Source of the DNA: Paraphysomonas bandaiensis
Lineage: Eukaryota; Protista; Chrysophyceae
DNA: 64,000 nucleotides
Direction of reading: 5' to 3'
NCBI GenBank assembly: GCA_965644295.1
Contig: CBFFRP010000073.1
Span: forward strand, 1 to 64,000
In this document: positions 2,606-46,177 of the stretch, piece after piece
Position numbering within the stretch: the stretch's first letter is position 1
How the letters are laid out: each line of letters starts with the position of its first letter
Made by a program: the position numbers and the translations under genes
The notes under the pieces: generated by a model
Told to the model about the DNA's origin: nothing
The model's database searches: none
What the model saw: only the letters and a program-made list of their open reading frames with translations

Positions 2606-3661
2606 CTAGGTGAAAATATCGGGGCTCACAGATTCCACAACAGAGATCACCTCAGTGTTACTGGAGACACCCTGTCGTTTAGCTTGCACAGGAGATTGCG
2701 CAGGGAGCGTGAGTGCGATGACAGCACTACCAAGAAAACTTTTTACAGAATCCTTCAAAGCAGCACCTTTATGCAACGTCCACTTTACGGGTAAGTAACG
2801 AGCCTTAGTAACAGCAACCAAGCCGTCCGTGCTTTCTTCCCCAGGGTGCACACGAGAAACTCCCCGCAAGTAGTCCGATGAAGAGGAGTGCTGAGAGCTG
2901 GCGGCCATTGAAGACTCGCGCATCGGTACTGCGTCGTCCGCCATGCACTGCACCATGCGGTGGATTTCGTAGTATTCTCTCATATTAACTGCGCATTCAA
3001 AACCAAATATTTTCACCAGTTTTAGCTCCAGGGCATTGACTCGTTCGACCTCCAGCATTCCGTTGCCGACTGCGGCTGTGAAGTCACAATTCAAAAGGGC
3101 AAAGTCATCGAACATTTTGCATGAGAGCAACGAACAAGCAAGAACTGTTGCTTTCCAATTGTTCGAGCACACCCGAAATTTGTTGTTTGTTATTTTCATC
3201 ATACGCTCAAGGTAGATAAGAACAACCACAACAAGCTCGTACTCCATGTTAACCGCCTTGAAAAGTCGAGTTATGAACCCCTCGACCGTATCAATCGATA
3301 CATACTACAGCACACATTGTTAGTACACCAGTAACATATAACTAACCATACATACCTCAACAGTAAACTTCTTGTCCGATGATGGGACGATATCACAGCC
3401 ACCAACATTAAATATACTGAACTCATTACACGGAACGTAACTCTCAGCAGCGGAATCATTTATATATGAGCCAATCATAGATGCCACACAGCGCATGATA
3501 TCAGGGTCAATGTAGCTGTTTTGTGGGGGGTACTTGCGAAGTCTCTTGTCGCTGACGGTCCTGTTGTAGGCCCTGCTATAACAACTGTTATGACCGCTGC
3601 GTGTGTATGTATACATATACGAACCGTTCCATATGTATGACACCTTTAATCTACTGCTCAC
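2606..3661 (-). CDS. Cyclin (cyclin Y / Pho80-like cyclin-box protein); 5' end uncertain
   Basis: Cyclin box YLERMM...NWKATVLACSLLSCKMFDD...VNALELKLVKIFGF. A 51-nt GT-AG intron (3305-3355) joins the upstream exon (DPDIMRCVASMI) in frame. Confidence 0.8.
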
Positions 3662-4265
3662 AAGGGATCATCTATACGTTTGTGTTGCTCTGATAGGAGA
3701 GACTGTCAAGTGGTGTTGTGTGTTCTAGTGTTGTTCTCTTATTATATTCTGAGTTTATTATATGACACACTCTCTATATGTATGTACGTGAAGGTATGTA
3801 TGTATATGTATACATACGAGTCATTCGGTGATGTACTTGCACTTTAGTTCAGAAGGGGATTTGCCGTACGAGGAACCCACAAAACGATTATCGTACAGTG
3901 ATTTTCAAGGGTCGTGAGGGGAAGAGACTTCCTTCCCAGCGGACGTCGTACCCGATATATACAAAATACCTTATTTTTATAGACTAATATCTATAATTCC
4001 CATTTATCAGGCGTTTTGAATTCAAAAGTCGATTTTTCACAGACCACAAATGTAGTAAATTAGTTCTAGCGAATCATAATTGAATTGATTGGACGGTGGG
4101 AGGTGGTACTATATAGAGAGAGTTGCTGCTCAACTATGCTATAGGAGAACTGCTGTAGAGAGGAGAGTCCTGCTGTATCTTCACATATAGACAATGCTGT
4201 GCAAGAGGAATTGAACAAATCAATACACATACTGATGCTATAATTAGAGAATAAAAACACTTTAG

Positions 4266-5827
4266 ATGGCAAGTTTAGTCGAGGAAGTTTATGCATCATT
4301 TCAAGAGAATACAGACATAGATGAGCTGGGCGTTATTCTGTCTCCAGCTCCTCCTAATGTCATATGCACTGAAAACAAGTTGGGTATTTCAATGACAGTA
4401 TTGAAACCTATGTTTTCGTATGCTGTTCCTCGATTGTATAGTGTTGGTCTTGAGTTTAAGCGATGTAAAACTCATGAACTTGCACAGGAATTACTAAAAT
4501 TGACTTTGGCAATACTAGTCGTCAAGGGGGACTTTCCACCGGCTTTGAATATGCGTAAAGAGTTAATAGTATATGGTCATTTAGACCCTTTAAATGAAAT
4601 GCATGTTCTAGAGGTTATACTCTCGAAGCATCCGAAGTCGCCCAGTTGTTGGCATCATAGAAAGTGGTGTATGTTGCAATTATCAGAAAAAAATATTCTT
4701 CCCATATCCCATATTGTGCATCAGGAATGCAGCTTATGTAGTCGCTCTTGTGACCTATACCCCAAAAACTACTATGCATGGAACCATAGACTATGGATAA
4801 CAGAAAATATGAACGAGAATGAAGTCAGTAAATTTGTATAAAAACAATATAATATTGACTGTTATATGTGTTGCAGTTACATGAGGAGTTGGAGTGGACA
4901 GGAAGATGGCTGCGGAAACACGTATCGGATCACTCTGCCGTTAGTCATTATACCCAGGTGGTTCTCTTGCTCTCTAAACTAGGAGTGCATGTGATGCCCA
5001 AAGCAGTTAGAGAGGGAGTGGAATTGGTGGGTAAATGCGCTGGTCATGAGAGCCTGTGGTACCTCAGGCGCACGCTTGCATCAATTCTAATCGACCGCGT
5101 CACTCATGATATGCCCTCATGCGAAACTTACGAAGTGATACAGCAGCCAGACTGCTCAAAGTGGAAGAATATTCTCTATCACTGTATTTCAGAAGCGAGT
5201 GATTTGGAGATTAGAAGTGATGACAGCGATGACGAGGACCTGAATGTAGAGTATCATATGAATAAGCTGTCCACCCTCTTCTCCACGTTTCCCAACTGCG
5301 AATGCGATATTTCTCCAAGTGAACTGGCGAATTCCTTCCTTGTTTGGGTTAATTGTTGGTTGGAATTCGAAGTTAAATTTGTAGTGGCATGTATCAATGA
5401 CGATTCATCTTGGGATCCGGAAACCCAACGACGACAGGGTGTACTCTACCTTGCGCATATATTTCATAAGGTCGAGACTAATATTTGCTGCTGTAGTTTA
5501 TCACGTATCATTGAGATGTTACTGTGAATATTATGCCTCCTTTTCTTTCTAAATGTACGTCTTACTCTAATCATGTTGTAGCTTGCAAACGCATTTTGTA
5601 TATCCGGAGAGCAGGAGGCCGATCGTTGCACACGAACCAATGATGATACGCCGACTCTTAAAAATACTCTTTCCGAATCGTTGCAAAATATCTGCCGGTA
5701 TATTTCTAGTGACCCCACAATAGGTATGCGTTAATTCGTATTATACTTACGAGTTACTTTGTCATTTGTAGAATCCAACTCCAAAATGAAATGGAAATAC
5801 TTTCTTGATCATTGGCGTAGTAACTGA
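4266..5827 (+). CDS. PTAR1: Protein prenyltransferase alpha-subunit repeat protein (PTAR1-like)
   Basis: PPTA repeats HPKSPSCWHHRKW, YPKNYYAWNHRLW, HVSDHSAVSHY, GHESLWYLRR. Four exons with GT-AG introns; stop TGA at 5825-5827. Confidence 0.8.
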
Positions 5828-7169
5828 ATAACTGTACATAGAGTGCAAGCAAATGTAGAATCAGTACTTTTGGTTAGCTAATGTCTGTCCTTGAATGCAG
5901 CATAGCGCCGTTTATGAATAGTAAACTCTATAAATTCGTTCTCTCTTTTCTACCCTCAACAATAATACATTGGCATGCTAACAACGTGTAAATACAGTTG
6001 TAAATGTTTGAGTTTGTACTTTATTTGTTCTCTGCTGGATGGCTACAGAATTTATATTCAAAAAGTAATTGGTGAAGGTTATTTGAGTATTTTCTTACTA
6101 TACGCTAAGAAGGTTTCCCGCGAACTCCGGGGGGAGTTATATCACCGTTATCATTAGAAAAAAACGAAATATTTTCATTGATGGGTATCGTTCCAATGGG
6201 ATTGTTACAAGGCATATGAAGGGCTTTGTCATAACTCTGATTTACATCTACTAAAAGCACTGTATTGGCATGGAATGTGTTCATATTATTACAAACTCAA
6301 ATCTTGCATATACCTGAACTAATAAACCTGTTTATACAACTATTCCATCTACTCTGAGCTAAAAAGGCTGGATTCATTGATAACCCAGTATGCCACTCTT
6401 AATGCCCCAAAGTATGCAGCCATCATCATAGCCTTCTGCTTACCTGTAGGGAACTGTGCATCTGCATCGTCGCTATTCTTGCCTCTGATTGCGAACATTA
6501 TTCTTTTATAAATACAACTGTGGGTAGAAATAAATGAGGTGGATAGTGAGTGCTCTGTTGCTATTTGATGGTACTGGGAACTCTATATCACTGTATGTCT
6601 CCACTCCTCTCTATAGTTTCTGTGTATGTGTATGTATATGTATATGTATACTATGCCATGTAGATATACATACACCTGCAGCTCCCACCACCACAAAAAC
6701 ACTGAAGAATATATCCCCATCACCAGCAGCAGATGATGAGTATTATCGATCGGTTTGTCCCAATCCATATGGACGTTTCAAGTCCATATAGTCCGCAGCT
6801 CTATAGTACATACTTCTGCTGCTGTACTGCTGTGTATGTATGTATAGGTACATGGACGTGTATGTATGTATGTGTGTGTATCTATATGTGTGTATGTATG
6901 TAGAGTTCTTTAAGCAGCCTGCACGGTTATTAGCACTCATATAACCTCAGATGATATCATACAAATGCGAGAAACTCTCTCTATATCGCAGTAGCTCAAC
7001 TCGATGTACCATAGACTCTTTACATGTATGAATTGATACTCTTATCGCCTGTTAGTGATCTCTTTCACTGCCAATAGAGTCGTATCTTACACAGCCATTA
7101 GTTGCTTATATATGAGCCTCTTAATACTCATTCGATCACAGTTATAGTCATTTTATCCCAATAAACTGT

Positions 7170-10100: not shown

Positions 10101-12220
10101 TGGCACCGCTTTGAAGTCTAAGGTTCCTCACGAGAGGGACAACGCGACCTCTGGAAATAAAGATTCCAGTGATGCGGAGACAAAATCATGTTGGAGTAAT
10201 GTGACGTCGAAGAAAGTTGTTGATTGCGCAATAGTTAAAAGTGATTCAGAGTCAACGAGTAAGTATTCTTGTATGTTACTTAGTGGTATTTTCTGCTTAC
10301 TATATATACCCCTCAGAAACAGCACAGCTTTCATGTGACAGTCCTACAACTGTGAATTCTGTCGGTGAAGATTCTAATAGTAAGCGAATATTGTTGCCTC
10401 CAGAGCGGCCTGATCATGTGACTCCAACTACAACAGGGGCTATGGCTGTCTCAGCTCCTGTGATGACTGATGAGCGAGTCCGAAGAACTGGTAAAAAGAC
10501 TGAAGTGATCAGTTCTATAGAGGAAGCACATGAGATGGAAAATCAAGAAATTCTACGACCACTTCTTCCAGCGGATAGTTGTACATCTCTTTTCAGTGCA
10601 GGTGTGAATGACAATGAAGGAGAGGATGAATGGTGGGGAAATGAACCTGCTGCTGCTCCAGAGACAACGAAAGCCGTGAGTGAAGAAGATGACGGTGGTG
10701 ACTCGGATGTAGATATTGGACCCTACGGCTACGTTGATGAAAAGTCTGATGGACAGGAAGATGGCGAGGCCTTTGACTATGAGTCTCTGGAAGGATGGAA
10801 TGAGTGTTTACACACCTCCATGGCGACGGCTGCTCATCATGCGGCCTTCTACGGATTTGCACCTGTGCTTGAGATGCTGAGTCGTCACTTCGATGTGTTT
10901 GCGTTGGATAAGAATGGAAGAACTCCACTCTTTTATGCTTCGCTTCGCAATAACTTGGACTGTGTGCTTCTTCTTGTGTCATTAGGTATGCATATGTTTC
11001 TTCTATGCGCCTTGCTAACAGTGTATTCAGATGCACAGTGGATCGAGGTAGGGGACAGTCGTGGAGACACCGCCATACATGCCGCTGCGATATCGGGTGG
11101 TTTGGAAGTTTTGCAGTTTCTCCTTAGCTGCGAAGTTAACCCAAGTATCGCCAACTTTGAGGGCCTGACACCTGTACATTTAGCGAAAACATATGAAGGT
11201 CTCCTCGCCCTGCATGAAGCCAATGCAACCATGTACTGCGTCGATAGTCACAACAGGATGCCAGTGTGGTACAGTGCAAAGGACGGGAATGCTGCTGGAG
11301 TAGGGTTGCTGTGTAGTTTAATGCCTCCAGAATACATCACATGGCAAGACTCTGAGGGCAACACTATCCTACATATAGCATGTATGGCCGGACACAGCGA
11401 TGTGGTAGAGGTGATATGCATGTGGATCACTTCTTTGGACGATTTTTATATTCTGAACAAAAAGAATTATACTCCAGCACACACGGCTTCTTCTGCTGAA
11501 GTCCTCAAGAAGTTGTATGAATATGGGGTCAATTTATGGACTGCTGACCCGAAATGGAGGTACCCGTTGTTTTTGAATAGCTTTCAGGGACGAGTAGATT
11601 GCGTTGCCCTCCTGATCGAGCTAGCATTGTTGAAAAATGAAGCTCTCATTTCAGCGCAAGATGTTCAAGGAGATACTGCATTGCATGCAGCTGTAATAAA
11701 TGGGCACATACAATGTACTTCTCTCCTTTTGTTTTTCCTTCGTGATCATCCCAACTCAAAGGGCTTGCGTCCAAGCCAACTGGCGCAGCGGGCCGGACAC
11801 AATCAGCTTGCGAATTTTGTGTATCAAATTGATCAGAGAAAGGAGTACGGGGAAACTTCATGTGATATATTTGAGTGTACATTTGAGAACCTAGCGGCGG
11901 TAACTTTGTATTATGGGTCAAGATGGACGAAGCTATATGATGCATATAACAATGAGGTGTACTACTACGATAGAGTCCTGGGAAACTCACAGTGGCACAG
12001 GCCTGACTCTTATGATGAGAATCCTGGGGAAGAGACGAGCAGTGATAAGGCTCGAGAAGTTCTGGTGAACTTCTATATGCAATATAACCCTGATAAGCTG
12101 ATTAACGTAAACGAAATTCTGCATACATACAAAAATAATTACAGCGAGTTGTTTGTTCAACTTGCGCAGAGATACCAAGTGGAAGACATATCCATGTTTA
12201 CTGCCCGCTATGGGCAATAA
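7170..12220 (+). CDS. Large coiled-coil / disordered SPR-rich / ankyrin-repeat / WW-domain protein
   Basis: ORFs 7170, 7948 and 10241 are joined by short GT-AG introns (e.g. ~7438-7494, 7572-7619, 7812-7911, ~10259-10316, ~10987-11030). E/R-rich helix, many VSPR motifs, canonical ankyrins (GRTPLFYA, GDTAIHAA, GNTILHIA, GDTALHAA) and a WW domain (WTKLYD...YYYDRVLGNSQWHRP). Confidence 0.8.
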
Positions 12221-18219: not shown

Positions 18220-21200
18220 ATGTCTTGTGGAGGCTGTAGACGCGAGCTTTCTCCAGAGGAGCGAATGCTGGAGAAAGCCTTGAAAAGAAAACGGGAAAAA
18301 GAAATAGTAAAACAAATTCAGGAGAGGTGAATGTCGTGGTGTATTCTTGGTCTATTGTGATTGATTTTTCACAGTGAAACAGTGGCTACTACAGCGCTTG
18401 ATCGCAGTGTAAGTAAACAGGTTTCAGCCAATTATACCTCTGAAGACGATGATGATTCTATTGTATTGGAAGATCACGAAGTGTTAGACACATTATCCTC
18501 TCTATCAGTAGACTCACCTGGGTCCGATATGTCGCTAAGTGATTACGCTTTTGCAAAGCCAAAACTTTCACCTGTTGAAGTCCGCAAGTACTTCGGAAAC
18601 CCGGCGCGTAATCGCTTTTTTAAGCATTATCAGTGGCTGAGTAAGCAACAACGGCTGCAAAGTCTGCCAAAAACCATCGAAGAGGACACCGAGCTCTGTC
18701 GTGGTGCCGCGCTTGTGTTCGATAATACTGATGACCCCGACTCTGATATGTTTCGCAGTTGCAGAGAAGATGAGTGTGTAGATGCTGCAGATAGCATAGA
18801 TGAGATTGACGCAAAGTACAGCGAAAAGACTCAAGCTTTGGTCAATACCTTACGAGCGATCACGCCAGATGTATATAATCTGCCCCAGCAAGGCTCAGGT
18901 ATGACAGAGCCGACATCTCCGCGGAGCAAGTATATTATGGGGTGTTTGTTTCGTAAAATCAATCCTAGAGCTTCCCTTATAATTCGGAAAAAGTTGACGA
19001 GGGAACTTCACCTTGAGCACTACGGCATTGGTGATGAAATGGCCCAACAAGTAGCAGCCTCACTTATTGATCTTCCTTTCGTTAGCTACTTAAACATATG
19101 CGATAACAACCTCACTGATGCGGGTCTCCGACCTATTTTGGATGCAGTAATGACCATGCCGAATTTACTAGAATTAAACTTGTCCGAGAATATTATAGGA
19201 CCATTAACAGCGGATGCAATGTCTACGTTTTTGTCCCGGCGACCAGTTTGTCCGCTTGAAAGATTAATTTTACGGAAAGCTAATGTAGATGATTATGAGG
19301 GCGAAAGATTTGTACAGGCACTTATTGGCAATGATAACTTTGTTGGGCTAGACCTTTCTCAAAACCAGATTGGTGATGCTGAGCTATTGAATACTGTCAA
19401 GCCAAACCTTATAACCGCCACAGAGGCATTGGCCAGTTTATTGAGATCACCAACATGCAAGTTAGAAGAGCTAAAAGTGTCTTGGAATATGATTCGGTTA
19501 GATAGTGGAGTTGACTTTGCCCGCTCTCTTTCTGTAAATAGGTCTTTGACATACTTGGACGTATCATACAATTCATTGGGACACTCGGGGTATGTTGCTG
19601 AATTACGTTTCCTGTCTCCCCAACTAATTTATCGGATTTGTGTACAGAGGCATAGCCTTAGGAGATGCATTGTTGGACAATAAAGTTCTCTCAACTATAC
19701 TACTGGCAAATAATAATATTGATGCAATGGCCTGCTTTGTTATATGTGTAGCCGTGGAACAGAACCCCTCTCTTCGTCGATTAAGCTTGGATGGAAATCC
19801 AATCGGGGAGCAAGGAGCACAGTGTGTAATGAATGTACCATCAGTGGTAGGATGCAGAGTGGAAATAACAGCGGCTAATTGTAACACTGCGCTGCGCTCT
19901 GTCGACGAGTTAGCTTTTGATTATAGCAATACGTGCAGAGAATATACTCTTGATATGGCTGATTCCGTTCAAAGGGCAGTGGCTTTCAAGTTGCTTCACA
20001 TTGTCGCTAATCACCCATCGTATGTGTTTTCGAAGTTCTCGTATGCGCCGTCCACATCGAAAAAGACATCCTCGAAACTAATGTGGATTCCACTGGATTT
20101 AAAACAGGTTATTTCTACGAAGTGAAATATGCTGTTTTCATTTTGATTGTTCAGGTCATGATAAAAGATAAGGTGCAATACTTTACGGATGACGAGAGAG
20201 AGGTAGTAACAGTTCAATATCAAGTTATATATGGTTTTATACACAGTAGATTTTAGAAAATTTGGAGAAGCTAAGGGAATCTGCCAGGAGCTCGGAAAGA
20301 GCGAAACTCTTGTTCAATCAATTTGATATAGACAATTCCGGGGAAATTGATAAAGATGGTACAATTATTATAGATGTTTATCAAAGCGTATCTGAGTTCT
20401 CCCTCCGTAGAATTATTTCAACTTATGAAAAGTATTGGACTTGATATTGATGAAACTGAAATAGAGGTGCGGTTTAATCTATAACTGGTTTCAAGACCAA
20501 TAAAATGTGCAGGACATGATGGCCATGTTTGATATCAATGGAGACGGAACAATAGAATTACCAGAATTCATTAATTTCATAAAGTATCAATACAAGAGTG
20601 CGATAGCTAGGATACGAGATATGACTGAATCACCAGGTAATGCTAGATCATATACATGTACTCATTAATCACTTGCGAAGCTATGGTTCTGAGCTCGGAT
20701 TTATCACACACACACCGTTATGTTCCTCCAAGGACAGGAATATTACATATAGAGGTGCTGTCCTTGACTGAATTTTGTCGTGTTTTATTCCATGCTAGGT
20801 TGTGGATGGTTTTGTTCTGAAAGAACATTTTCAAGTCATTACGTCTACAATTCGTCGCAATTCTACGAATGTGGCTAGAAATATGGGGGTAATGATACTT
20901 GTCAATATATGTCGACCTAATTGATTTCTTGAAGGACGTTGCCAGCCTTCTGTCATTCGTTGTACAAAATTCGAAGGTGGCAGCTGCATGTATTGATTTA
21001 TTCTATACGCTTAACATGGGTATAGTTGAGGTTAGGTGATGCATTTTCATTTTATGAAACTATGTATGCGGATATGGGCGATAAAGCAAGAGTTTTGGCG
21101 AAAATTCTTCCACAGGTGACTTTATATTGTCACTGTTGACGATATTTAATGAGACCGTAGATGGCTTCGGCCACAGAGGCAAGGATGCTTGTGTCAAAGG

Positions 21201-24450: not shown

Positions 24451-25341
24451 CTACGCACCAACAGAATTTTCTAAACACCCTAATCCATCTATCTCAATTT
24501 TAATCTTATCACCTGTTTTAAGTACACTGGGTGGGTCCATTGCGAATCCCACACCAGAAGGAGTTCCTGTGAGAATTATGTCTCCTGGATATAGAGTCAT
24601 CCCCTGCGACAGTTGCCGTATTATTTCAGGAACATTAAATATCATTTTACTAGTGCTGCTGTCTTGGCGAATTTCGCCATTCAACCACAGGCGTATACCT
24701 ATGTCGCTCACATCGATATCCCCTTTAGGAACAATATACGGGCCCATAGGGCACGTCTTGTCAAGGCACTTTCCCTTCATAAATTGTATATGACGCTTTT
24801 GCACTTCGCGAGCAGACACATCATTAGCAATAGTATATCCAAAAACATAGTCCATGGCACTCTCTTTCGGTATGTCGCATCCCTTTCTCCCTATGACAAC
24901 AGCGAGCTCAGCTTCGTAATCCAACCACTTCGTAGTAGATTTATGAGAAGGTATGTCCTCATGGGGACCAATCACACACTCTGGGACTTTAGAGAAGAAT
25001 TGAGGATACTTTGGTAGAGCTGGTGGCTCACTACTAGAGGTCTTCGCTACCTCTGTCACGTGGTCCATATAGTTCTTACCCACACAAAACAAGTTACGCC
25101 GAGGATAAGGGATCGGTGCAAGGAGACGGATATCACAAGAGTCACGAACACTGTGTGGAGGTGGGTTCTTAATGGCATCACGGATATCACTGAGAGCAGC
25201 GTCTCCTGCCTCTATAATAGCTGAGAGGGACGAGGGCAGAGACACTGACGACAGATCCATAACACCACTACTGGAAAGAACCGCACCAGCATGAACACGA
25301 TTGTTCTTGCATTGGTAGCTTACTAGACGAAGAATTGACAT
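24451..25341 (-). CDS. FAHD2: Fumarylacetoacetate hydrolase family protein (FAHD2-like)
   Basis: CVGKNYMDH, LDYEAELAVVIG, GYTIANDVSAR, GKCLDKTCPMGP, TLYPGDIILTGTPSGVG; single exon, 296 aa. Confidence 0.93.
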   Translation of the reverse strand: MSILRLVSYQCKNNRVHAGAVLSSSGVMDLSSVSLPSSLSAIIEAGDAALSDIRDAIKNPPPHSVRDSCDIRLLAPIPYPRRNLFCVGKNYMDHVTEVAKTSSSEPPALPKYPQFFSKVPECVIGPHEDIPSHKSTTKWLDYEAELAVVIGRKGCDIPKESAMDYVFGYTIANDVSAREVQKRHIQFMKGKCLDKTCPMGPYIVPKGDIDVSDIGIRLWLNGEIRQDSSTSKMIFNVPEIIRQLSQGMTLYPGDIILTGTPSGVGFAMDPPSVLKTGDKIKIEIDGLGCLENSVGA

Positions 25342-25371
25342 CGCAGACAGATTGCATTATAATCTGATCAA

Positions 25372-25424
25372 CATACCTACCTACCTACCTACCTACCTAC
25401 CTACCTACATACATACATACATAC

Positions 25425-25455
<31 letters not shown>

Positions 25456-25816
25456 CATACATACATACATACATACATACATACATACATACATACATAC
25501 ATACATACATACATACATACATACCTACATACATACATACATACATACATACATACATACATACATACATACATACATACATACATACATACATACATAC
25601 ATACATACATACATACATACATACATACATACATACATGCATACATACATACATACATACATACATACATACATACATACATACATACATACATACATAC
25701 ATACATACATACATACATACATACATACATACATACATACATACATACATACATACCTACCTACCTACCTACCTACCTACCTACCTACCTACCTACCTAC
25801 CTACCTACCTACATAC

Positions 25817-25847
<31 letters not shown>

Positions 25848-26059
25848 CATACATACATACATACATACATACATACATACATACATACATACATACATAC
25901 ATACATACATACATACATACATACATACATACATACATACATACATACATACATACATACATACATACATACATACATACATACATACATACATACATAC
26001 ATACATACATACATACTACATACATACATACATACATACATGCATACATACATACATAC
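25372..26059. repeat. Compound (TACA)n/(TACC)n microsatellite, ~690 bp
   Basis: Directly visible: two blocks, each (TACC)n - TACTTAC - (TACA)n. Confidence 0.98.
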
Positions 26060-26273
26060 TCCCTATTTCTAGGTACTATATCTAGATATTTGGGATATTC
26101 TGTGCAGAGGAGTAGGAATTCCTACTCTGTGTATATGGGGTTATATTCGTAATATTCTGCTGGGTCGACTTATTCCCGCAGACAGATATGGGTAGCTACA
26201 TCAAGAGCACCTTCTTGTTATCTGCTGGGTTAGCACTCTAACAGTCTCATATAATCAATGAATCAGTGTTGAT

Positions 26274-27899
26274 ATGTTGCATATATCTGATCTTAACGAT
26301 GATGTGATTCGTCTCATCATCTCTATGATCCCACACTCAGCTCTCCTTCCTGTCGTCATGACTTGTAAGAGACTTCACGATATGGCTGATAACACGAGAG
26401 ATAAGAGCAGAGATAAGAGGAGAGGGAGACTTGAGTCACATGCATCTCACTACTGTATGACCAACTCAATGGTATCGTGGGCTCTTTCTATGGGATGCTC
26501 ACACAGTTCGCTAATGTATAGATGTGCACTATACGGCAGACTACAGCAGATGAAACATATGAAGAGTACCATCATGCACCATACGATACACTCACAGGAT
26601 CCTTCATGTCTATGGGGCGTAGATACTAGCATAGCAGCTGCAGAAGGTGGGTACTTGGATGTACTGAAGTGGCTTCGTTCACAGGATCCTCCGTGTCCAT
26701 GGGATCCAAGAACTTGCGAGGCTGCTGCAGAAGGTGGTCACCTGGATGTTTTGAAGTGGCTTCGTTCACAGGATCCTCCATGTCCATGGGATGTATATAC
26801 TTGCGAGGGTGCTGCACAAGCTGGTCACTTGGGTGTTCTGAAGTGGCTTCGTTCACAGGATCCTCCATGTCCATGGGGCTCATTTACTTGCGAGGCTGCT
26901 GTAGATGGTGGTCACTTGGATGTTCTGAAGTGGCTTCGTTCACAGGATCCTCCATGTCCATGGGAGGCATATACTAGTATTGCTGCTGCAGAAGGTGGCC
27001 ACCTGGATGTTTTGAAGTGGCTTCGTTCACAGGATCCTCCATGTCCATGGAATGAATCTACCTGCAGGGCTGCTGCTGCAAGTGGACACTTGGATGTACT
27101 GAAGTGGCTTCGATCACAGGATCCTCCCTGTCCGTGGGATGCCTGTACGTGCAGGAATGCTGCACGATTGGATCACTTGGATGTTCTGAAGTGGCTTCGT
27201 TCACTGGATCCTCCGTGCCCATGGGATCCAGGAACTTGCAGTAATGCTGGACGAAGTGGTTACTTGGATGCTCTGAAGTGGCTTCGGTCACAGGATCCTC
27301 CGTGTCCATGGGATCCAAGAACTTGCGAGGCTGCAGCAAAAGCTGGTCACTTGGATGTTCTGAAGTGGCTTCGTTCACAGGATCCTCCGTGTCCATGGGA
27401 TGTATATACTTGCAGGAATGCTGCACGAAGTGGTTACTTAGATGTTCTGAAGTGGCTTCGTTCACAGGATCCTCCGTGTCCGTGGGATGTATATACTTGC
27501 AGGAATGCTGCACGAAGTGGTTACTTAGATGTTCTGAAGTGGCTTCGGTCACAGGATCCTCCGTGTCCATGGGATCCAAGAACTTGCGAGGCTGCTGCAG
27601 AAGGTGGTCACCTGGATGTTTTGAAGTGGCTTCGTTCACAGGATCCTCCGTGTCCATGGGATGTATATACTTGCAGGAATGCTGCACGAAGTGGTTACTT
27701 AGATGTTCTGAAGTGGCTTCGTTCACAGGATCCTCCGTGTCCATGGGATCCAAGAACTTGCGAGGCTGCTGCAGAAGGTGGTCACCTGGATGTTTTGAAG
27801 TGGCTTCGGTCACAGGATCCTCCGTGTCCATGGGATCCAGGAACTTGCGAGAATCTACCTGCGAGGCTGCTGCAGAAAGTGGTCACCTGGATGTCTTGA
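26274..27899 (+). CDS. F-box + 29-aa ankyrin-like repeat protein (giant-virus/algal-type 'GHLxVLKWLR...CPWD' family); ends at a frameshift within a longer array
   Basis: N-terminal F-box-like LNDDVIRLIISMIPHSALLPVVMTCKRLH, then ~15 repeats GHLDVLKWLRSQDPPCPW-xxxTCxxAAxx; intron-free. Confidence 0.8.
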   Translation: MLHISDLNDDVIRLIISMIPHSALLPVVMTCKRLHDMADNTRDKSRDKRRGRLESHASHYCMTNSMVSWALSMGCSHSSLMYRCALYGRLQQMKHMKSTIMHHTIHSQDPSCLWGVDTSIAAAEGGYLDVLKWLRSQDPPCPWDPRTCEAAAEGGHLDVLKWLRSQDPPCPWDVYTCEGAAQAGHLGVLKWLRSQDPPCPWGSFTCEAAVDGGHLDVLKWLRSQDPPCPWEAYTSIAAAEGGHLDVLKWLRSQDPPCPWNESTCRAAAASGHLDVLKWLRSQDPPCPWDACTCRNAARLDHLDVLKWLRSLDPPCPWDPGTCSNAGRSGYLDALKWLRSQDPPCPWDPRTCEAAAKAGHLDVLKWLRSQDPPCPWDVYTCRNAARSGYLDVLKWLRSQDPPCPWDVYTCRNAARSGYLDVLKWLRSQDPPCPWDPRTCEAAAEGGHLDVLKWLRSQDPPCPWDVYTCRNAARSGYLDVLKWLRSQDPPCPWDPRTCEAAAEGGHLDVLKWLRSQDPPCPWDPGTCENLPARLLQKVVTWMS

Positions 27900-30800
27900 A
27901 ATGGCTTCGTTCACAGGATCCTCCGTGTCCGTGGGATGTATATACTTGCAGGAATGCTGCACGAAGTGGTTACTTAGATGTTCTGAAGTGGCTTCGTTCA
28001 CAGGATCCTCCGTGTCCGTGGGATGTATATACTTGCAGGAATGCTGCACGAAGTGGTTACTTAGATGTTCTGAAGTGGCTTCGGTCACAGGATCCTCCGT
28101 GTCCATGGGATCCAAGAACTTGCGAGGCTGCTGCAGAAGGTGGTCACCTGGATGTTTTGAAGTGGCTTCGTTCACAGGATCCTCCGTGTCCATGGGATGT
28201 ATATACTTGCAGGAATGCTGCACGAAGTGGTTACTTAGATGTTCTGAAGTGGCTTCGTTCACAGGATCCTCCGTGTCCATGGGATCCAAGAACTTGCGAG
28301 GCTGCTGCAGAAGGTGGTCACCTGGATGTTTTGAAGTGGCTTCGGTCACAGGATCCTCCGTGTCCATGGGATCCAGGAACTTGCGAGAATCTACCTGCGA
28401 GGCTGCTGCAGAAAGTGGTCACCTGGATGTCTTGAAATGGCTTCGTTCACAGGATCCTCCGTGTCCGTGGGATGTATATACTTGCAGGAATGCTGCACGA
28501 AGTGGTTACTTAGATGTTCTGAAGTGGCTTCGTTCACAGGATCCTCCGTGTCCATGGGATCCAAGAACTTGCGAGGCTGCTGCAGAAGGTGGTCACCTGG
28601 ATGTTTTGAAGTGGCTTCGTTCACAGGATCCTCCGTGTCCATGGGATCCAGGAACTTGCGAGGCTGCTGCAGAAGGTGGTCACCTGGATGTTTTGAAGTG
28701 GCTTCGTTCACAGGATCCTCCGTGTCCGTGGGATGTATATACTTGCAGGAATGCTGCACGAAGTGGTTACTTAGATGTTCTGAAGTGGCTTCGTTCACAG
28801 GATCCTCCGTGTCCATGGGATCCAAGAACTTGCGAGGCTGCAGCAAAAGCTGGTCACTTGGATGTTCTGAAGTGGCTTCGTTCACAGGATCCTCCGTGTC
28901 CATGGGATGTATATACTTGCAGGAATGCTGCACGAAGTGGTTACTTAGATGTTCTGAAGTGGCTTCGTTCACAGGATCCTCCGTGTCCGTGGGATGTATA
29001 TACTTGCAGGAATGCTGCACGAAGTGGTTACTTAGATGTTCTGAAGTGGCTTCGGTCACAGGATCCTCCGTGTCCATGGGATCCAAGAACTTGCGAGGCT
29101 GCTGCAGAAGGTGGTCACCTGGATGTTTTGAAGTGGCTTCGTTCACAGGATCCTCCGTGTCCATGGGATGTATATACTTGCAGGAATGCTGCACGAAGTG
29201 GTTACTTAGATGTTCTGAAGTGGCTTCGTTCACAGGATCCTCCGTGTCCATGGGATCCAAGAACTTGCGAGGCTGCTGCAGAAGGTGGTCACCTGGATGT
29301 TTTGAAGTGGCTTCGGTCACAGGATCCTCCGTGTCCATGGGATCCAGGAACTTGCGAGAATCTACCTGCGAGGCTGCTGCAGAAAGTGGTCACCTGGATG
29401 TCTTGAAATGGCTTCGTTCACAGGATCCTCCGTGTCCGTGGGATGTATATACTTGCAGGAATGCTGCACGAAGTGGTTACTTAGATGTTCTGAAGTGGCT
29501 TCGTTCACAGGATCCTCCGTGTCCATGGGATCCAAGAACTTGCGAGGCTGCTGCAGAAGGTGGTCACCTGGATGTTTTGAAGTGGCTTCGTTCACAGGAT
29601 CCTCCGTGTCCATGGGATCCAGGAACTTGCGAGGCTGCTGCAGAAGGTGGTCACCTGGATGTTTTGAAGTGGCTTCGTTCACAGGATCCTCCGTGTCCGT
29701 GGGATGTATATACTTGCAGGAATGCTGCACGAAGTGGTTACTTAGATGTTCTGAAGTGGCTTCGTTCACAGGATCCTCCGTGTCCATGGGATCCAAGAAC
29801 TTGCGAGGCTGCTGCAGAAGGTGGTTACTTAGATGTTCTGAAGTGGCTTCGGTCACAGGATCCTCCGTGTCCATGGGATCCAGGAACTTGCAGTAATGCT
29901 GCACAAGCTGGTCACTTGGATGTTCTGAAGTGGCTTCGTTCACAGGATCCTCCATGTCCATGGGATCCAAGAACTTGCGAGAGTGCTGCACAAGCTGGTC
30001 ACTTGGGTGTTCTGAAGTGGCTTCGTTCACAGGATCCTCCCTGTCCATGGGATGTGTATACTTGCGAGGGTGCTGCACAAGCTGGGTTACAGTTACTTGT
30101 ACTGTAGTGGCTTCCTACACGGAACCCTCCCTGTCTATGGGATGCAGGAACTTACTTGAAGGCAGCAAAAGTTGGTCACTTGGATGTTCTGAAGTGGCTT
30201 CGTTCACAGGATCCTCCCTGTCCATGTGATGTATACACTTCTAGGGCTGCTGCTGCAAGTGGACACTTGGATGTACTGAAGTGGCTTCGATCACAGGATC
30301 CTCCCTGTCCGTGGGATGCCTGTACGTGCAGGAATGCTGCACGATTGGATCACTTGGATGTTCTGAAGTGGCTTCGTTCACTGGATCCTCCGTGCCCATG
30401 GGATCCAGGAACTTGCAGTAATGCTGCACGAAGTGGTTACTTGGATGCTCTGAAGTGGCTTCGGTCATCGGATCCTCCGTGTCCATGGGATCCAAGAACT
30501 TGCGAGGCTGCTGCAGAAGGTGGTCACCTGGATGTTTTGAAGTGGCTTCGTTCACAGGATCCTCCGTGTCCATGGGATGTATATACTTGCAGGAATGCTG
30601 CACGAAGTGGTTACTTAGATGTTCTGAAGTGGCTTCGTTCACAGGATCCTCCGTGTCCATGGGATCCAAGAACTTGCGAGGCTGCTGCAGAAGGTGGTCA
30701 CCTGGATGTTCTGAAGTGGCTTCGGTCACAGGATCCTCTGTGTCCATGGGATCCAGGAACTTGCAGTAATGCTGCACAAGCTGGTCACTTGGATGTTCTG

Positions 30801-31085
30801 AAGTGGCTTCGTTCACAGGATCCTCCATGTCCATGGAATGTGTATACTTGCGAGGGTGCTGCACAAGCTGGGTTACAGTTACTTGTACTGTAGTGGCTTC
30901 CTACACGGAACCCTCCCTGTCTATGGGATGCAGGAACTTACTTGAAGGCAGCAAAAGTTGGTCACTTGGATGTTCTGAAGTGGCTTCGTTCACAGGATCC
31001 TCCCTGTCCATGTGATGTATACACTTCTAGGGCTGCTGCTGCAAGTGGACACTTGGATGTTCTGAAGTGGCTTTATTCACAAGAT
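26590..31085 (+). repeat. Coding minisatellite: ~51 x 87-bp ankyrin-like modules with higher-order duplications
   Basis: Constant core GATGTTCTGAAGTGGCTTCGTTCACAGGATCCTCCGTGTCCATGG plus a variable block. Identical 14-nt insertions at 27852, 28388 and 29359; identical TAG-bearing divergent unit at 30105 and 30891. Confidence 0.95.
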
Positions 31086-31205
31086 CTTTCCAATATACGT
31101 TTTTTTTAATGGACTTGCAGTACCTTTTCTTTTTCCATGGACATTGATGTTGTGCATTGGCTTTTTGACAGGCACTACCATAGTTTTTTGGAGATATCCA
31201 GTGTT

Positions 31206-31352
31206 GAGCTTTGTATCGACGGGTTACAGCAAGAGCGGATTAGTGTGATAGAAGTGAGTTTTGTATCAACGGGTTACAGCAAGAGCGGATTAGTGTGACA
31301 GAAGTGAGCTTCGCATCAATGGGTTACAGCAATAGATGCCCAGTGTGATACA
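31206..31352. repeat. 50-bp tandem repeat x3
   Basis: GAGCTTTGTATCGACGGGTTACAGCAAGAGCGGATTAGTGTGATAGAAGT at 31206 and 31256, diverged copy at 31306. Confidence 0.9.
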
Positions 31353-32669: not shown

Positions 32670-32940
32670 TGTAGAGCTGCTGCACTATAGGGGCACTTGG
32701 ATGTTCTGAAGTGGCTTCGTTCACAGGATGTTCCGTGTCGATGGGGTGTAAAGCCTTCCATTGCTGCTTAACCATTGATGCGGGAACTAGGATGTTGACG
32801 CGTGGCTTCTAACTCAAGGCCCTCCATGTCCATGTTATTAGTGAACTGACTTTTGCAGTACTTTTACTTCTGCTGTGAGGCATTGGATGTTCTGAATCGG
32901 CTTTGACAGGAAGTATCAGCATTTTCTGGACATGTCTAGA
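32670..32940 (+). pseudogene. Decayed paralogous fragment of the ankyrin-like repeat gene (last modules + 3' tail)
   Basis: GGGCACTTGGATGTTCTGAAGTGGCTTCGTTCACAGGATG at 32691; the tail 32868-32940 aligns with 31112-31201; frameshifted. Confidence 0.8.
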
Positions 32941-44548: not shown

Positions 44549-46177
44549 ATGTACTCGTTATCCCTATCCCTACTCCTTCTATCTCTACCACATTATGTCT
44601 CCTCCTCAATGAGCGTCTATGTGTCTCTGCGTGAGTGCATTGAGCATATCTCTCCAGACCCCCTCTTTCTCCCCTATAAGGGCGATGCATATAACAACTC
44701 ACGAGTTGGATGCAATTTCCGATATGATAACTACTGGCCTGGTCTGATATTGGTTGTGCGGAGGGTGGAGGATGTGCAGGCAGCTCTCATGTGTGCAGCG
44801 GAGCAGGTAGTGGAGGTGGTGGTAGTTAACGGTGGTCACAGCATGGAGGGGATGTCATGTACTAACGGACTATTGCTTCAGATGGATGACTTCCATAATG
44901 TGACAGCATTTGGTGTGGGCGCAGAGAAGAGCGATGCCACCATAACTGTGCAGGGAGGAATGAGGTTAGGGCGGCTATATGGTAGTATTATTGACTTGAC
45001 TCGGGGCTTGAAAGACACATACATATTTGGTGGTGGAACATGTCCAACTGTAGGAATTTCGGGACACATATTATGCGGTGGTTATGGTTTGCTGGGTCGC
45101 CTTCTGGGTCTTACATCCGACCAAGTGGTGTCCATTGATGTTGTAAATGCTCAGGGCGCAGTTGTGACCGCCAATGCTTCATCGAACTTAGACTTATTCT
45201 GGGCGCTAAGGGGGAGTTGTGGATCATGCTTTGGCGTGGTTGTATCGGTAACCTTAAGATTATACCTGATGCCGAGCCCTGAGCTTACTCGAATTGATGT
45301 CCCAGATATTTTATACAGTAATGTGCCTGGAGGCATCCAAGCGTTGAATGGGGTGGTTTTGTGGTGGCAAGAATGGGCCACACGGCAGGCAGCAATATCT
45401 TGCACATCCGCACTGCACATCAAAGATGATAGACTCTCGCTACAAATTCTTTATGTTGGCACTTTGCAAGAGACTCTGGACAACACGCTGGATGAACTGT
45501 GGCAGGGGTTACACAAGGTCATGGAGTTTACTACACTCTTTAAATCGTATAAATCTGGATCGTTTCTAGATAGTGTTGTGTGGTGGTCACACGATGAAAA
45601 CATAACCACTGTAGACGATTTACTCTCTGTCATTTCTCTTCAATCTCTTGCGGAGCGGGACAGGAGTCGAAGGAAGACTAAAAGTGCCCTGCTAATGCAA
45701 CCAATGGATGAAGAAGCCGTGCAATCTGTTATCAGTATGCTTGTTTCTGGAAACCTGAATCAATTTGAAATAAAAGCTTACAGCTATCAATGTAATCATC
45801 AAATTCAACACGAGATTCTGGCACCTGGAAGATTTAGTGCCATCTGGGATGACAAATCTCCCTTACGCCGTGGCCATGCAATGGAGGTGCATTATGGAAA
45901 CAGCTATGCGGCAAACGAATGGGACGACATCAGTACTTTAGATGCAAACCTGGTTCAACAAGTGAACATTGCTGGAAATGTGCTGCTACCTTTTACATCA
46001 GGGGATGGAGATGAAGTATGGGGGTACCCTGGTTACATTGACCGCGATTTGAGCAAGCCTGGATATGCGTACTTTGGCTTGAAAAATTCCGCTCGGCTAT
46101 TTCACCAGCGCGAAAAGTTTGATAAGGAAAACGTCTTAATGAATTCAGCATGTGAGTATCTCTGGAGCACTATATAG
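44549..46177 (+). CDS. Secreted FAD-linked oxidase, berberine-bridge-enzyme / VAO-like
   Basis: Signal peptide; NGGHSMEG, GTCPTVGISGHILCGGYG, DLFWALRG...FGVV, YPGYID, REKFDKENV; single exon. Confidence 0.9.
   Translation: MYSLSLSLLLLSLPHYVSSSMSVYVSLRECIEHISPDPLFLPYKGDAYNNSRVGCNFRYDNYWPGLILVVRRVEDVQAALMCAAEQVVEVVVVNGGHSMEGMSCTNGLLLQMDDFHNVTAFGVGAEKSDATITVQGGMRLGRLYGSIIDLTRGLKDTYIFGGGTCPTVGISGHILCGGYGLLGRLLGLTSDQVVSIDVVNAQGAVVTANASSNLDLFWALRGSCGSCFGVVVSVTLRLYLMPSPELTRIDVPDILYSNVPGGIQALNGVVLWWQEWATRQAAISCTSALHIKDDRLSLQILYVGTLQETLDNTLDELWQGLHKVMEFTTLFKSYKSGSFLDSVVWWSHDENITTVDDLLSVISLQSLAERDRSRRKTKSALLMQPMDEEAVQSVISMLVSGNLNQFEIKAYSYQCNHQIQHEILAPGRFSAIWDDKSPLRRGHAMEVHYGNSYAANEWDDISTLDANLVQQVNIAGNVLLPFTSGDGDEVWGYPGYIDRDLSKPGYAYFGLKNSARLFHQREKFDKENVLMNSACEYLWSTI

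What the first reader, a model, noticed from the sequence alone, without database searches (positions are those of the whole stretch)
26274..31085. F-box gene with a ~51-module shufflable ankyrin-like cassette array: candidate diversifying recognition/ubiquitin-adaptor locus
Seen: each 87-bp module has a near-invariant half (G[H/Y]LDVLKWLRSQDPPCPW) and a variable half drawn from a limited alphabet (DPRTCEAAAEG, DVYTCRNAARS, DVYTCEGAAQA, DPGTCSNAAQA, GSFTCEAAVDG, EAYTSIAAAEG, NESTCRAAAAS, DACTCRNAARL, DPRTCEAAAKA). Sub-blocks are recombined, e.g. DVYTC+EGAAQA vs DVYTC+RNAARS, and DPGTC+EAAAEG vs DPGTC+SNAAQA. Copies are near-identical even at synonymous sites, implying recent or ongoing exchange. 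Only ~15 modules lie in the intact ORF; ~36 lie downstream of frameshifts or stops. Known: F-box proteins are SCF substrate adaptors, ankyrin variable positions form the binding face, and this repeat type is expanded in giant viruses and algae. Inference: the invariant half acts as a recombination anchor and the out-of-frame tail as a silent module reservoir, giving a VLR/TALE-like variable binder that routes targets (possibly viral proteins) to the proteasome.
Basis: partly seen in the sequence, partly recalled or inferred. Interest (0 to 1): 0.85.

Follow-up and report, generated by a model that had tools for sequence, protein, structure and literature searches.

The report
Overgrown, broken F-box ankyrin repeat gene
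This is one member of a large protist family of probable ubiquitin-ligase adaptors. Its ankyrin-repeat array recently grew to 51 units while copying its own frameshift and stop mutations. The long out-of-frame tail therefore looks like young dead repeat DNA, not a purpose-built store of spare recognition modules.

Summary
At 26616-31100 (+) there are 51 tandem 87-bp (29-aa) short ankyrin modules behind a probable N-terminal F-box. Only 14 complete modules lie in the 541-aa ORF (26274-27899).

- **Variable block:** the scaffold half is under purifying selection (dN/dS about 0.1).
- **Reservoir reading:** not supported. The ORF ends at a 14-nt out-of-register junction. That junction occurs three times inside blocks identical over at least 438 nt to its left and 184 nt to its right, so one lesion was copied by 536- and 971-bp higher-order duplications that are 99.7% identical.
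- **Stop module:** a degenerate TAG-bearing module was likewise copied, at a 786-bp offset.
- **Tail diversity:** the tail is poorer than the head. It has 16 sequence types in 34 modules, and 20 of those modules carry one of two variable blocks. In the ORF, 14 of 14 modules are distinct.

The best reading is ordinary unequal crossover and gene conversion in a repeat array of high internal conservation, as in fungal NLR sensor domains, with a recently truncated gene. The same repeat type, joined to F-box or RING domains, occurs in green algae and giant-virus contigs. This scan already reported the family, and a similar overgrown locus, on other DNA of this genome. Transcription and strain variation could not be resolved.

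The parts
26274..27899 (+). Only intact ORF: 541 aa. It comprises a probable F-box, a linker/cap, 14 complete 29-aa ankyrin modules, a DPGTC stub and 15 out-of-frame residues, then TGA.
26283..26399 (+). Probable F-box (residues 4-42). It has L-N where the classical L-P stands.
   Evidence: Pfam F-box 18.3-19.4 bits against a cut-off of 20.5, covering profile positions 1-39 of 43. hhalign gives 94.7% probability, E 6e-8, to the F-box region of Pfam-annotated F-box/ANK homologues. AF2 predicts three helices with pLDDT 83-92. The local match to Skp2 chain 1fs2_A covers 38 columns at rmsd 1.2 A, but the Foldseek E-value of 4.3 is not significant.
26400..26615 (+). Linker and N-terminal ankyrin-like capping helices (residues 43-114), conserved in the few N-terminal relatives.
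26616..27833 (+). Modules 1-14, in frame with the ATG. All 14 differ at the nucleotide level, and they carry 10 different variable blocks.
27849..27862 (+). First 14-nt out-of-register junction (the DPGTC module joined to an (N)ESTC-type module). It shifts the frame and ends the ORF 35 nt later.
28385..28398 (+). Second copy of the same 14-nt junction.
   Evidence: identical to the first copy for at least 438 nt on the left and 184 nt on the right
29356..29369 (+). Third copy of the same junction. The three sum to 42 nt, so the frame returns to that of the ATG.
27366..29820 (+). Young higher-order repeat zone. 27366-28024 equals 27902-28560 (659 bp, 2 mismatches). 27902-28849 equals 28873-29820 (948 bp, 3 mismatches). 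27267-28024 equals 28774-29531 (758 bp, 3 mismatches).
30054..30140 (+). Degenerate 90-nt-spaced module 40 with an in-frame TAG (30105-30107).
30840..30926 (+). Module 49, a copy of module 40 with the same TAG (30891-30893). It lies in the 786-bp-offset duplication 29982-30287 = 30768-31073 (5 mismatches).
30927..31109 (+). Last modules 50-51 and the likely ancestral C-terminal cap and stop (...KWLYSQDLSNIRFF, TAA at 31107-31109), in the same frame as the ATG.
   Evidence: Taking this as the ancestral end is inference from the C-terminal caps of homologues.

Best explanation
**What it is.** A chromosomal gene of a large F-box/short-ankyrin family in a marine protist. The N-terminal probable F-box would dock the protein on Skp1/cullin (inferred). 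The solenoid of 29-residue ankyrin repeats would bind the target through one face of the first helix, where seven codons change faster than silent sites.

**How the array evolves.** It evolves like other repeat arrays of high internal conservation. Homologous unequal crossover, replication slippage and gene conversion between near-identical modules add, delete and reshuffle units. Selection diversifies the binding face.

**What happened in this allele.**
- One out-of-register exchange created a 14-nt junction that truncates the protein after 14 repeats.
- Later higher-order duplications of 536 and 971 bp copied that junction twice more, and a 786-bp-offset duplication copied an older nonsense-bearing module.
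- Together these inflated the array to 51 units.

**Status of the parts.** The 37 downstream modules are recent, untranslated by-products. They could re-enter the frame only by chance unequal exchange. They are not a dedicated cassette store. The 541-aa head has the size of normal family members and may still work. Whether it is expressed is not shown.
For: **Array and lesions:**

**One lesion copied.** The three junctions are embedded in sequence identical for at least 438 nt on the left and 184 nt on the right. They lie inside blocks of 659-948 bp with 2-3 mismatches. The two TAG modules lie in a 306-bp block with 5 mismatches.

**Age contrast.** The young blocks are about 0.3% diverged. Synonymous divergence among module types is about 0.3.

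**Tail poorer than head.** The tail has 16 nucleotide types in 34 modules, and 20 of the 34 carry one of two variable blocks. The ORF has 14 types in 14 modules.

**Selection pattern.** Codons 1-11 give dN/dS 2.07 and codons 12-29 give 0.09. Seven codons (1, 2, 3, 6, 7, 10, 11) give 4.2. These codons lie at i, i+4, i+8 on the predicted helix 1.

**Domains:** ankyrin fold; F-box.

**Junction is real DNA.** A 93-nt unitig of a DNA run matches 27838-27930 exactly. Its depth is 82.5, against 20-41 for single-copy pieces nearby, which fits about three copies.

**Family context.**
- Homologues of 375-930 aa have the same repeat. Some have Pfam F-box domains, in Chloropicon, Raphidocelis and metagenomes.
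- Giant-virus contigs carry the repeat fused to a RING domain.

**Mechanism precedent:** fungal NLR repeats of high internal conservation (PMC12222747).
Against: - No population, clone or strain comparison could be made. Ongoing exchange and its rate are therefore inferred, not seen.
- Transcription is unresolved. The putative RNA runs gave only short unitigs that paralogues could supply, and none crossed the junction.
- The F-box stays below Pfam's threshold and lacks the signature proline.
- The dN/dS values come from non-independent paralogous repeats within one gene, with no significance test. Seven of the codons were picked after seeing the data.
If that layout recurs often, it would call for more than accident.
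Confidence: 0.7

Rival explanations
1. This would be a programmed or selected diversification locus in which the out-of-frame tail serves as a silent reservoir. Its modules would be moved into the expressed head by recombination at the invariant half, giving a VLR/TALE-like variable adaptor against viruses.
For: - The binding-face codons evolve faster than silent sites.
- Mosaic modules exist.
- Any in-register unequal exchange between a head module and a tail module would delete the junctions and bring tail modules into frame (this follows from the geometry).
- A similar head-plus-tail layout was noted at another locus.
Against: - The tail holds less diversity than the head. It is mostly recent copies of head modules 10-15.
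- Four of the seven tail-only variable blocks are trivial. One is the junction artefact itself. Three others are one base from a block found elsewhere in the array (DPGTCEAAAEG, DPGTCSNAARS and DPRTCESAAQA).
- The lesions were copied passively with their flanks.
- No recombinase or deaminase is seen among the large ORFs nearby.
- No variation data exist.
Confidence: 0.07
2. The whole locus, head included, is a dead pseudogene of an over-large family and is decaying neutrally.
For: - There are five lesions in what was probably once a single frame running to 31109.
- No exact transcript-derived protein of this locus is in a collection that holds this organism's MMETSP proteins.
- The putative RNA runs match the unique 5' part only with mismatches, and do not cover the junction.
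Against: - The head is open for 541 codons, with all 14 modules intact and different. Its length is typical of family members.
- The lesions are so young (0.3% divergence between copies) that decay could not yet show.
- Short-read transcriptomes assemble such repeats badly.
Confidence: 0.15
3. The higher-order structure of the tail is partly an assembly artefact, that is, a mis-expanded tandem array.
For: Arrays of near-identical 87-bp units are hard to assemble. No read or contig spanning the array could be examined, because read laying gave only unitigs of up to a few hundred bases.
Against: - The junction unitig is exact and about three times as deep as neighbouring single-copy unitigs in a DNA run. 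That run may be the source sample, so this is not independent of the sample.
- The copies differ by a few scattered substitutions, as real paralogous blocks do.
Confidence: 0.08

Closest known systems
Fungal NLR sensor domains with repeats of high internal conservation (Podospora HNWD/het-e, het-d; also ANK and TPR types) - PMC12222747
   Same: - Repeats of 24-42 aa are 80-100% identical within a gene.
- A handful of codons under diversifying selection lie on the binding surface.
- Gain, loss and shuffling of units occur by unequal crossover.
- Alleles are frequently inactivated.
   Different: - The effector end here is a probable F-box, not a NACHT/NB-ARC with a death domain.
- The organism is a marine protist.
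- Strain polymorphism was not examined here.
F-box or PRANC plus ankyrin adaptors of pathogens: poxvirus ANK/F-box-like proteins and Legionella AnkB (cited in PMC5871332; PDB 5k35 appears)
   Same: Ankyrin repeats bind the target, and an F-box recruits Skp1/cullin.
   Different: - Poxvirus proteins have the F-box-like motif at the C-terminus.
- These proteins have few, canonical 33-aa repeats.
- Here the protein is a host chromosomal family with 29-aa repeats in long arrays.
F-box plus 'PPCPW' short-ankyrin proteins of green algae (Chloropicon, Raphidocelis) and giant-virus contigs
   Same: - The 29-aa repeat consensus is the same (GHLxVLxWLRxQxPPCPWD..TC..AA).
- Some have an N-terminal F-box and the same linker (hhalign).
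- One viral contig joins the repeat to a RING domain.
   Different: - Those proteins have about 8-15 diverged repeats.
- Here the array is 51 units, largely near-identical and broken.
Expanded, fast-evolving F-box families of nematodes and plants, proposed as pathogen-recognition adaptors (PMC8665587, PMC4063957)
   Same: - A large lineage-specific family.
- A rapidly evolving substrate-binding end.
- An idea of routing foreign proteins to the proteasome.
   Different: Diversity there arises by gene birth and death with FTH, FBA, LRR or Kelch domains. It does not arise from intragenic repeat shuffling.
Ankyrin gene 'accordion' of Bodo saltans virus (PMC5871332)
   Same: - Very recent duplications of ankyrin-repeat sequence.
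- Coding sequences disrupted by the same recombination.
- An arms-race interpretation.
   Different: That case concerns whole genes duplicated at the ends of a viral genome. Here, repeats are duplicated within a host gene.
Lamprey VLR assembly and other donor-cassette systems (own knowledge)
   Same: A repeat protein with a constant scaffold, variable positions, and flanking non-expressed repeat units.
   Different: - Those systems have many diverse silent donors, a dedicated deaminase or recombination pathway, and somatic assembly.
- The first of these was tested here and was not met.

Membership tests
Ankyrin repeat proteins | Match to ankyrin profile HMMs above the curated threshold | tested here: met
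   Ank_4 114 bits (cut-off 22.7), Ank 77 bits, Ank_2 67 bits
Ankyrin repeat proteins | Helix-turn-helix solenoid fold | tested here: met
   AF2 gives pLDDT 80-93 over residues 115-520, with two helices per 29 residues. Foldseek hits to AnkB, ankyrin-1, NOMPC, DARPins, Espin and FEM1C have E-values of 3e-8 to 1e-4.
Ankyrin repeat proteins | Canonical 33-residue period | tested here: not met
   The period is 87 nt, or 29 aa. This is a short variant shared with algal and viral homologues.
F-box proteins (SCF substrate receptors) | F-box profile match above Pfam's gathering score | tested here: inconclusive
   18.3 and 19.4 bits against 20.5, over profile positions 1-39 of 43. Four of 7 N-terminal relatives hit F-box-like weakly.
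F-box proteins (SCF substrate receptors) | Homology of the N-terminus to F-box regions of annotated F-box proteins | tested here: met
   hhalign of A1 against A2: probability 94.7%, E 6e-8, 64 columns
F-box proteins (SCF substrate receptors) | Three-helix F-box fold | tested here: inconclusive
   AF2 predicts helices 9-18, 21-30 and 32-42 at pLDDT 83-92. The local match to Skp2 chain 1fs2_A is 38 columns, rmsd 1.2 A, 29% identity, but Foldseek E is 4.3.
F-box proteins (SCF substrate receptors) | Conserved Leu-Pro at the start of the motif, and binding to Skp1 | tested here: not met
   This gene and most of its few N-terminal relatives have L-N where the proline stands. The more distant F-box/ANK homologues have L-P. 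Skp1 binding cannot be tested with these tools.
Donor-cassette diversification systems (VLR, VSG, pilE/pilS, vlsE, avian pseudo-V) | Silent donors are numerous and more diverse than the expressed copy | tested here: not met
   The tail has 16 nucleotide types in 34 modules, and 20 of the 34 carry two variable blocks. The head has 14 types in 14 modules. The tail consists of 99.7%-identical copies of head modules.
Donor-cassette diversification systems (VLR, VSG, pilE/pilS, vlsE, avian pseudo-V) | Somatic or clonal variation of the expressed copy | not testable with these tools
   Only short unitigs were available. Metagenome scans found nothing.
Repeat receptors of high internal conservation (fungal NLR type) | Repeats 80-100% identical within a gene | tested here: met
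   Mean pairwise nucleotide identity is 0.81 for modules 1-9 and 0.88 for modules 10-37. Many modules are identical.
Repeat receptors of high internal conservation (fungal NLR type) | Few hypervariable codons with excess non-synonymous change on the binding surface | tested here: met
   dN/dS is 2.07 for codons 1-11 and 4.2 for seven codons, against 0.09-0.11 for the scaffold. The codons lie on one face of helix 1. No significance test was done.
Repeat receptors of high internal conservation (fungal NLR type) | NACHT/NB-ARC nucleotide-binding domain | tested here: not met
   Pfam finds only ankyrin and a weak F-box. The locus works like these receptors but is not an NLR.

The most novel reading that the evidence does not exclude
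In this protist, long lesion-bearing tails behind F-box/ankyrin genes might be a recurrent and useful state. Because all modules stay in register, a single mitotic unequal exchange would fuse tail units back into frame. Clonal populations would then continually generate new adaptor variants against giant viruses. This would be a passive, recombination-only receptor diversification system, with the ubiquitin-proteasome pathway as the effector arm.
Probability: 0.07. Interest if true: 0.8.

Novelty: new member of a known kind. Interest (0 to 1): 0.3.

Why it matters
The family as a whole is a plausible recognition or conflict system of marine protists. It has dozens of F-box adaptors whose ankyrin binding face evolves faster than silent sites, and the same repeat is shared with algae and giant viruses. 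It is barely treated in the literature found here.

This locus adds a clear, datable example of how such arrays grow. Higher-order duplications are blind to function and copy frameshifts and stops along with the repeats. The example cautions against reading every out-of-frame repeat tail as a cassette store.

It also marks a good target for long-read strain comparisons, which could measure how fast these arrays turn over.

Tried and rejected
**Read and contig evidence**
As the tool advised, I laid a part with fewer copies, 26160-27960. All four runs were held only as short unitigs, so module order, strain differences and transcription could not be settled.
- Metagenome scans for a locus-specific 5' word and for the junction gave 0 hits each.
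- Exact look-up found that neither the 541-aa product nor the neighbouring hydrolase is in the protein collection. Only the ORF at 44549-46174 is, from MMETSP.
- The contig of the closest N-terminal relative (P0122, 70% identity) is 633 bp and uninformative.

**Organism.** I tried to name it through the neighbouring hydrolase. The best hits are only 61% identical and the named ones are bacterial, so this gave no identification.

**Alternative readings of the lesions (rejected)**
- The 14-nt insert as a tiny intron: it has no GT...AG (sequence).
- A 22-nt GT...AG inside the stop module: removing it would not keep the frame (sequence).
- TAG as a sense codon: neighbouring ORFs end in TAG, including the one identical to a transcriptome-derived protein.
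- Long ORFs in other frames and on the minus strand: these are by-products of stop-free repeats.

**F-box fold.** Foldseek of the N-terminal model gave no significant global hit. A PDB profile search of the N-terminus found only ankyrin proteins.


Full report
**1. Observation**

Tandem Repeats Finder reports an array of period 87, with 50.6 copies, at 26637-31086. Overlapping higher-order rows have periods 174 and 261. Anchoring on a conserved 11-mer gives 51 modules from 26616 to 31100. The spacing is 87 nt except for three steps of 101 nt and two of 90 nt. A 26-nt core occurs 48 times in the array and once outside it, against none in shuffled sequence.

The only intact reading frame is 26274-27899 (541 aa). 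It contains 14 complete modules. The other 37 lie behind lesions.

Each module translates as D-x-x-T-C-x-x-A-A-x-x followed by G-[H/Y]-L-D-V-L-K-W-L-R-S-Q-D-P-P-C-P-W. Entropy is near zero in the second part and 1.5-2.2 bits at codons 2, 3, 6, 7, 10 and 11.

**2. What the protein is**

Pfam gives strong ankyrin matches (Ank_4 2e-33) and a sub-threshold F-box at residues 4-42 (18.3 bits against a cut-off of 20.5; 19.4 bits for the N-terminus alone).

*The N-terminal domain is rare.* An exhaustive search of 1.8 billion cluster representatives found six relatives.

*F-box evidence:*
- A profile of these six relatives aligns with the F-box-plus-linker region of homologues that carry Pfam F-box annotations. 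hhalign gives 94.7% probability and E 6e-8.
- With a 13-sequence alignment, AlphaFold2 predicts three short helices at residues 9-42 with pLDDT 83-92.
- Foldseek aligns these helices locally on the Skp2 F-box (1fs2_A, 38 columns, 1.2 A, 29% identity). The E-value of 4.3 is not significant.
- The motif has Leu-Asn where F-boxes normally have Leu-Pro.

I call it a probable F-box. Skp1 binding is untested.

*Repeat region.* It is modelled confidently from a single sequence (pLDDT 80-93). It matches ankyrin solenoids, DARPins and the ankyrin E3 receptor FEM1C.

*Variable positions.* In the model each module has helix 1 at codons 2-10 and helix 2 at codons 14-21. The variable pairs 2/3, 6/7 and 10/11 are spaced four residues apart, so they lie on one face of helix 1. 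From my own knowledge of DARPin design, codons 2, 3, 10 and 11 correspond to the randomised positions 2, 3, 13 and 14 of designed ankyrin binders.

**3. Selection pattern**

I used Nei-Gojobori estimates among the 23 distinct module types.

| Codon set | dS | dN | dN/dS |
|---|---|---|---|
| Constant half, codons 12-29 | 0.35 | 0.03 | 0.09 |
| Seven most variable codons (chosen after seeing the data) | 0.19 | 0.80 | 4.2 |

These are pairwise values among non-independent repeats, with no significance test. The twenty-fold contrast is nevertheless clear.

**4. Lesions and higher-order structure**

*The frameshift junction.* The three 101-nt steps are one and the same 14-nt out-of-register junction. 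A DPGTC module is joined to the (N)ESTC-type start of another (27849-27862, 28385-28398, 29356-29369). The three copies share identical sequence for at least 438 nt to the left and 184 nt to the right.

*The duplicated blocks:*

| Block 1 | Block 2 | Length | Mismatches |
|---|---|---|---|
| 27366-28024 | 27902-28560 | 659 bp | 2 |
| 27902-28849 | 28873-29820 | 948 bp | 3 |
| 27267-28024 | 28774-29531 | 758 bp | 3 |

*The stop modules.* The two 90-nt steps are two copies of a diverged module with an in-frame TAG (30105-30107 and 30891-30893). They lie in the block 29982-30287 = 30768-31073, which has 5 mismatches.

*TAG is a stop in this genome.* Neighbouring ORFs end with TAG, including one whose product is identical to a transcriptome-derived protein.

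*Order of events.* One frameshift and one nonsense lesion arose, and duplication then propagated each. The young blocks are about 0.3% diverged, whereas synonymous divergence among module types is about 0.3. The ballooning is therefore roughly a hundred times younger than the base array.

*Frame arithmetic.* Three junctions add 42 nt, so the frame returns to that of the ATG. The last module runs into a cap-like end (...KWLYSQDLSNIRFF, stop at 31107-31109) in that same frame. I infer that the ancestral gene was open to about 31109.

**5. Is the tail a reservoir?**

- The head (modules 1-14) has 14 different nucleotide sequences and 10 variable blocks.
- The tail (34 scorable modules) has 16 nucleotide types and 11 variable blocks. 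Twenty of its modules carry just DVYTC-RNAARS or DPRTC-EAAAEG.
- Seven blocks are tail-only. One is the junction artefact. Three are one base away from a block found elsewhere in the array: DPGTCEAAAEG, DPGTCSNAARS and DPRTCESAAQA.

A donor store would be expected to be at least as diverse as the expressed copy, and this one is not.

Exchange among modules does occur. Twenty-two of 78 informative site pairs fail the four-gamete test, and module 37 is a clear mosaic. That is what unequal crossover and gene conversion do in any such array.

**6. Reads**

Only unitigs were available.

- **Junction in DNA.** In the best DNA run a 93-nt unitig matches 27838-27930 exactly, across the junction. Its depth is 82.5, against 20-41 for nearby single-copy unitigs. 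That fits about three genomic copies and argues against an assembly artefact. The run may come from the source sample.
- **F-box copy number.** The F-box segment has summed depth in the thousands. This fits a large family, and earlier notes of this scan give 70-90 genes.
- **Transcription.** Putative RNA runs gave exact unitigs only within modules that paralogues or tail copies could supply. The unique 5' part matched only with mismatches, and nothing covered the junction module. Transcription remains open.

**7. Relatives and context**

- **Cellular relatives.** More than 2,700 proteins match the ORF. Those from Chloropicon, Raphidocelis, Balamuthia, Seminavis and Tribonema have the same PPCPW-type 29-aa repeat. 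Several carry a Pfam F-box.
- **Viral relatives.** Giant-virus contigs encode relatives 54-57% identical. One is fused to a RING finger (28.7 bits, above the cut-off). One has an F-box-looking N-terminus that Pfam does not detect.
- **Neighbourhood.** The window around the locus holds ordinary cellular genes: a SLAC1 channel, a tRNA methyltransferase, a thioredoxin, an FAD-binding protein, a canonical ankyrin/WW ORF and an LRR ORF.

**8. Comparison with what is known**

- **Closest mechanism.** This is the 'high internal conservation' repeat domain of fungal NLRs. There, repeats 80-100% identical evolve in concert by unequal crossover. A few codons are under diversifying selection on the binding surface, and alleles gain, lose, shuffle and often inactivate repeats (PMC12222747).
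- **Architecture.** F-box plus ankyrin is known from algal annotations, Legionella AnkB and, with the opposite domain order, poxviruses (PMC5871332).
- **Expanded F-box families.** Lineage-specific F-box families proposed as pathogen sensors are known in nematodes and plants.
- **Viral parallel.** Recent ankyrin duplications that also break genes are described for Bodo saltans virus.
- **Literature gap.** Papers on Chloropicon and Bathycoccus mention large ankyrin families only in passing.

This scan had already reported the family on other DNA of this genome. That includes one locus read as 'overgrown and stop-riddled' and the same three junctions at this place.

**9. Verdict**

The reading as an F-box/ankyrin adaptor with a fast-evolving binding face is supported. 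The silent-cassette, VLR/TALE-like mechanism is not supported.

The locus is a new member of a known kind. It is an instructive one for how repeat arrays inflate and break, but it is not a new system.

Noticed in passing
window 25371-26059: A very long (ACAT)n microsatellite, 172 copies at 97% match, sits between the hydrolase gene and the F-box gene. It produces spurious long ORFs on both strands.
   Followed up: no
window 24451-25341 (-): An intronless 296-aa fumarylacetoacetate-hydrolase-family ORF (Pfam 1.4e-71). Its best database relatives are only about 61% identical, and the named ones are alphaproteobacterial (Acetobacteraceae). The gene may be of bacterial origin in a eukaryotic chromosome.
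   Followed up: partly
window about 32680-32800 (+): A solitary degenerate module (TCRAAAL*GHLDVLKWLRSQDVPCRW...) with stop codons lies 1.6 kb downstream of the array. It looks like a relic of another array or of an older array end.
   Followed up: partly
window 31205-31332: A 50-bp tandem repeat, 2.6 copies at 91% match, lies just after the array.
   Followed up: no
window 26282-26464: In the DNA runs the F-box coding segment has summed unitig depth of about 1,600-6,900, against about 24 for the unique upstream flank. The N-terminal domain is therefore kept at 95% nucleotide identity or more in many tens of copies, even though it is almost absent from public protein databases.
   Followed up: partly
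L002:2788-4422 and L004:2836-3990 (giant-virus contigs): Viral contigs encode the same PPCPW-type short ankyrin repeats. In L002 they are fused to a C-terminal RING finger. In L004 they follow an F-box-looking N-terminus that Pfam does not detect. Viruses therefore couple this repeat to E3-ligase modules too.
   Followed up: partly
window 27897-27903, 28433-28439, 29404-29410: In each junction module a synonymous AAG-to-AAA change creates an ATG two bases after the frameshift-induced TGA. Each truncated frame is thus followed at once by a new long ORF, of 501 and 556 aa. This is probably a coincidence copied along with the block.
   Followed up: no
window 10241-12217 (+) and 18361-19680 (+): Other repeat-protein ORFs lie in the window: a canonical 33-aa ankyrin protein with a weak WW domain, and a leucine-rich-repeat ORF.
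   Followed up: no
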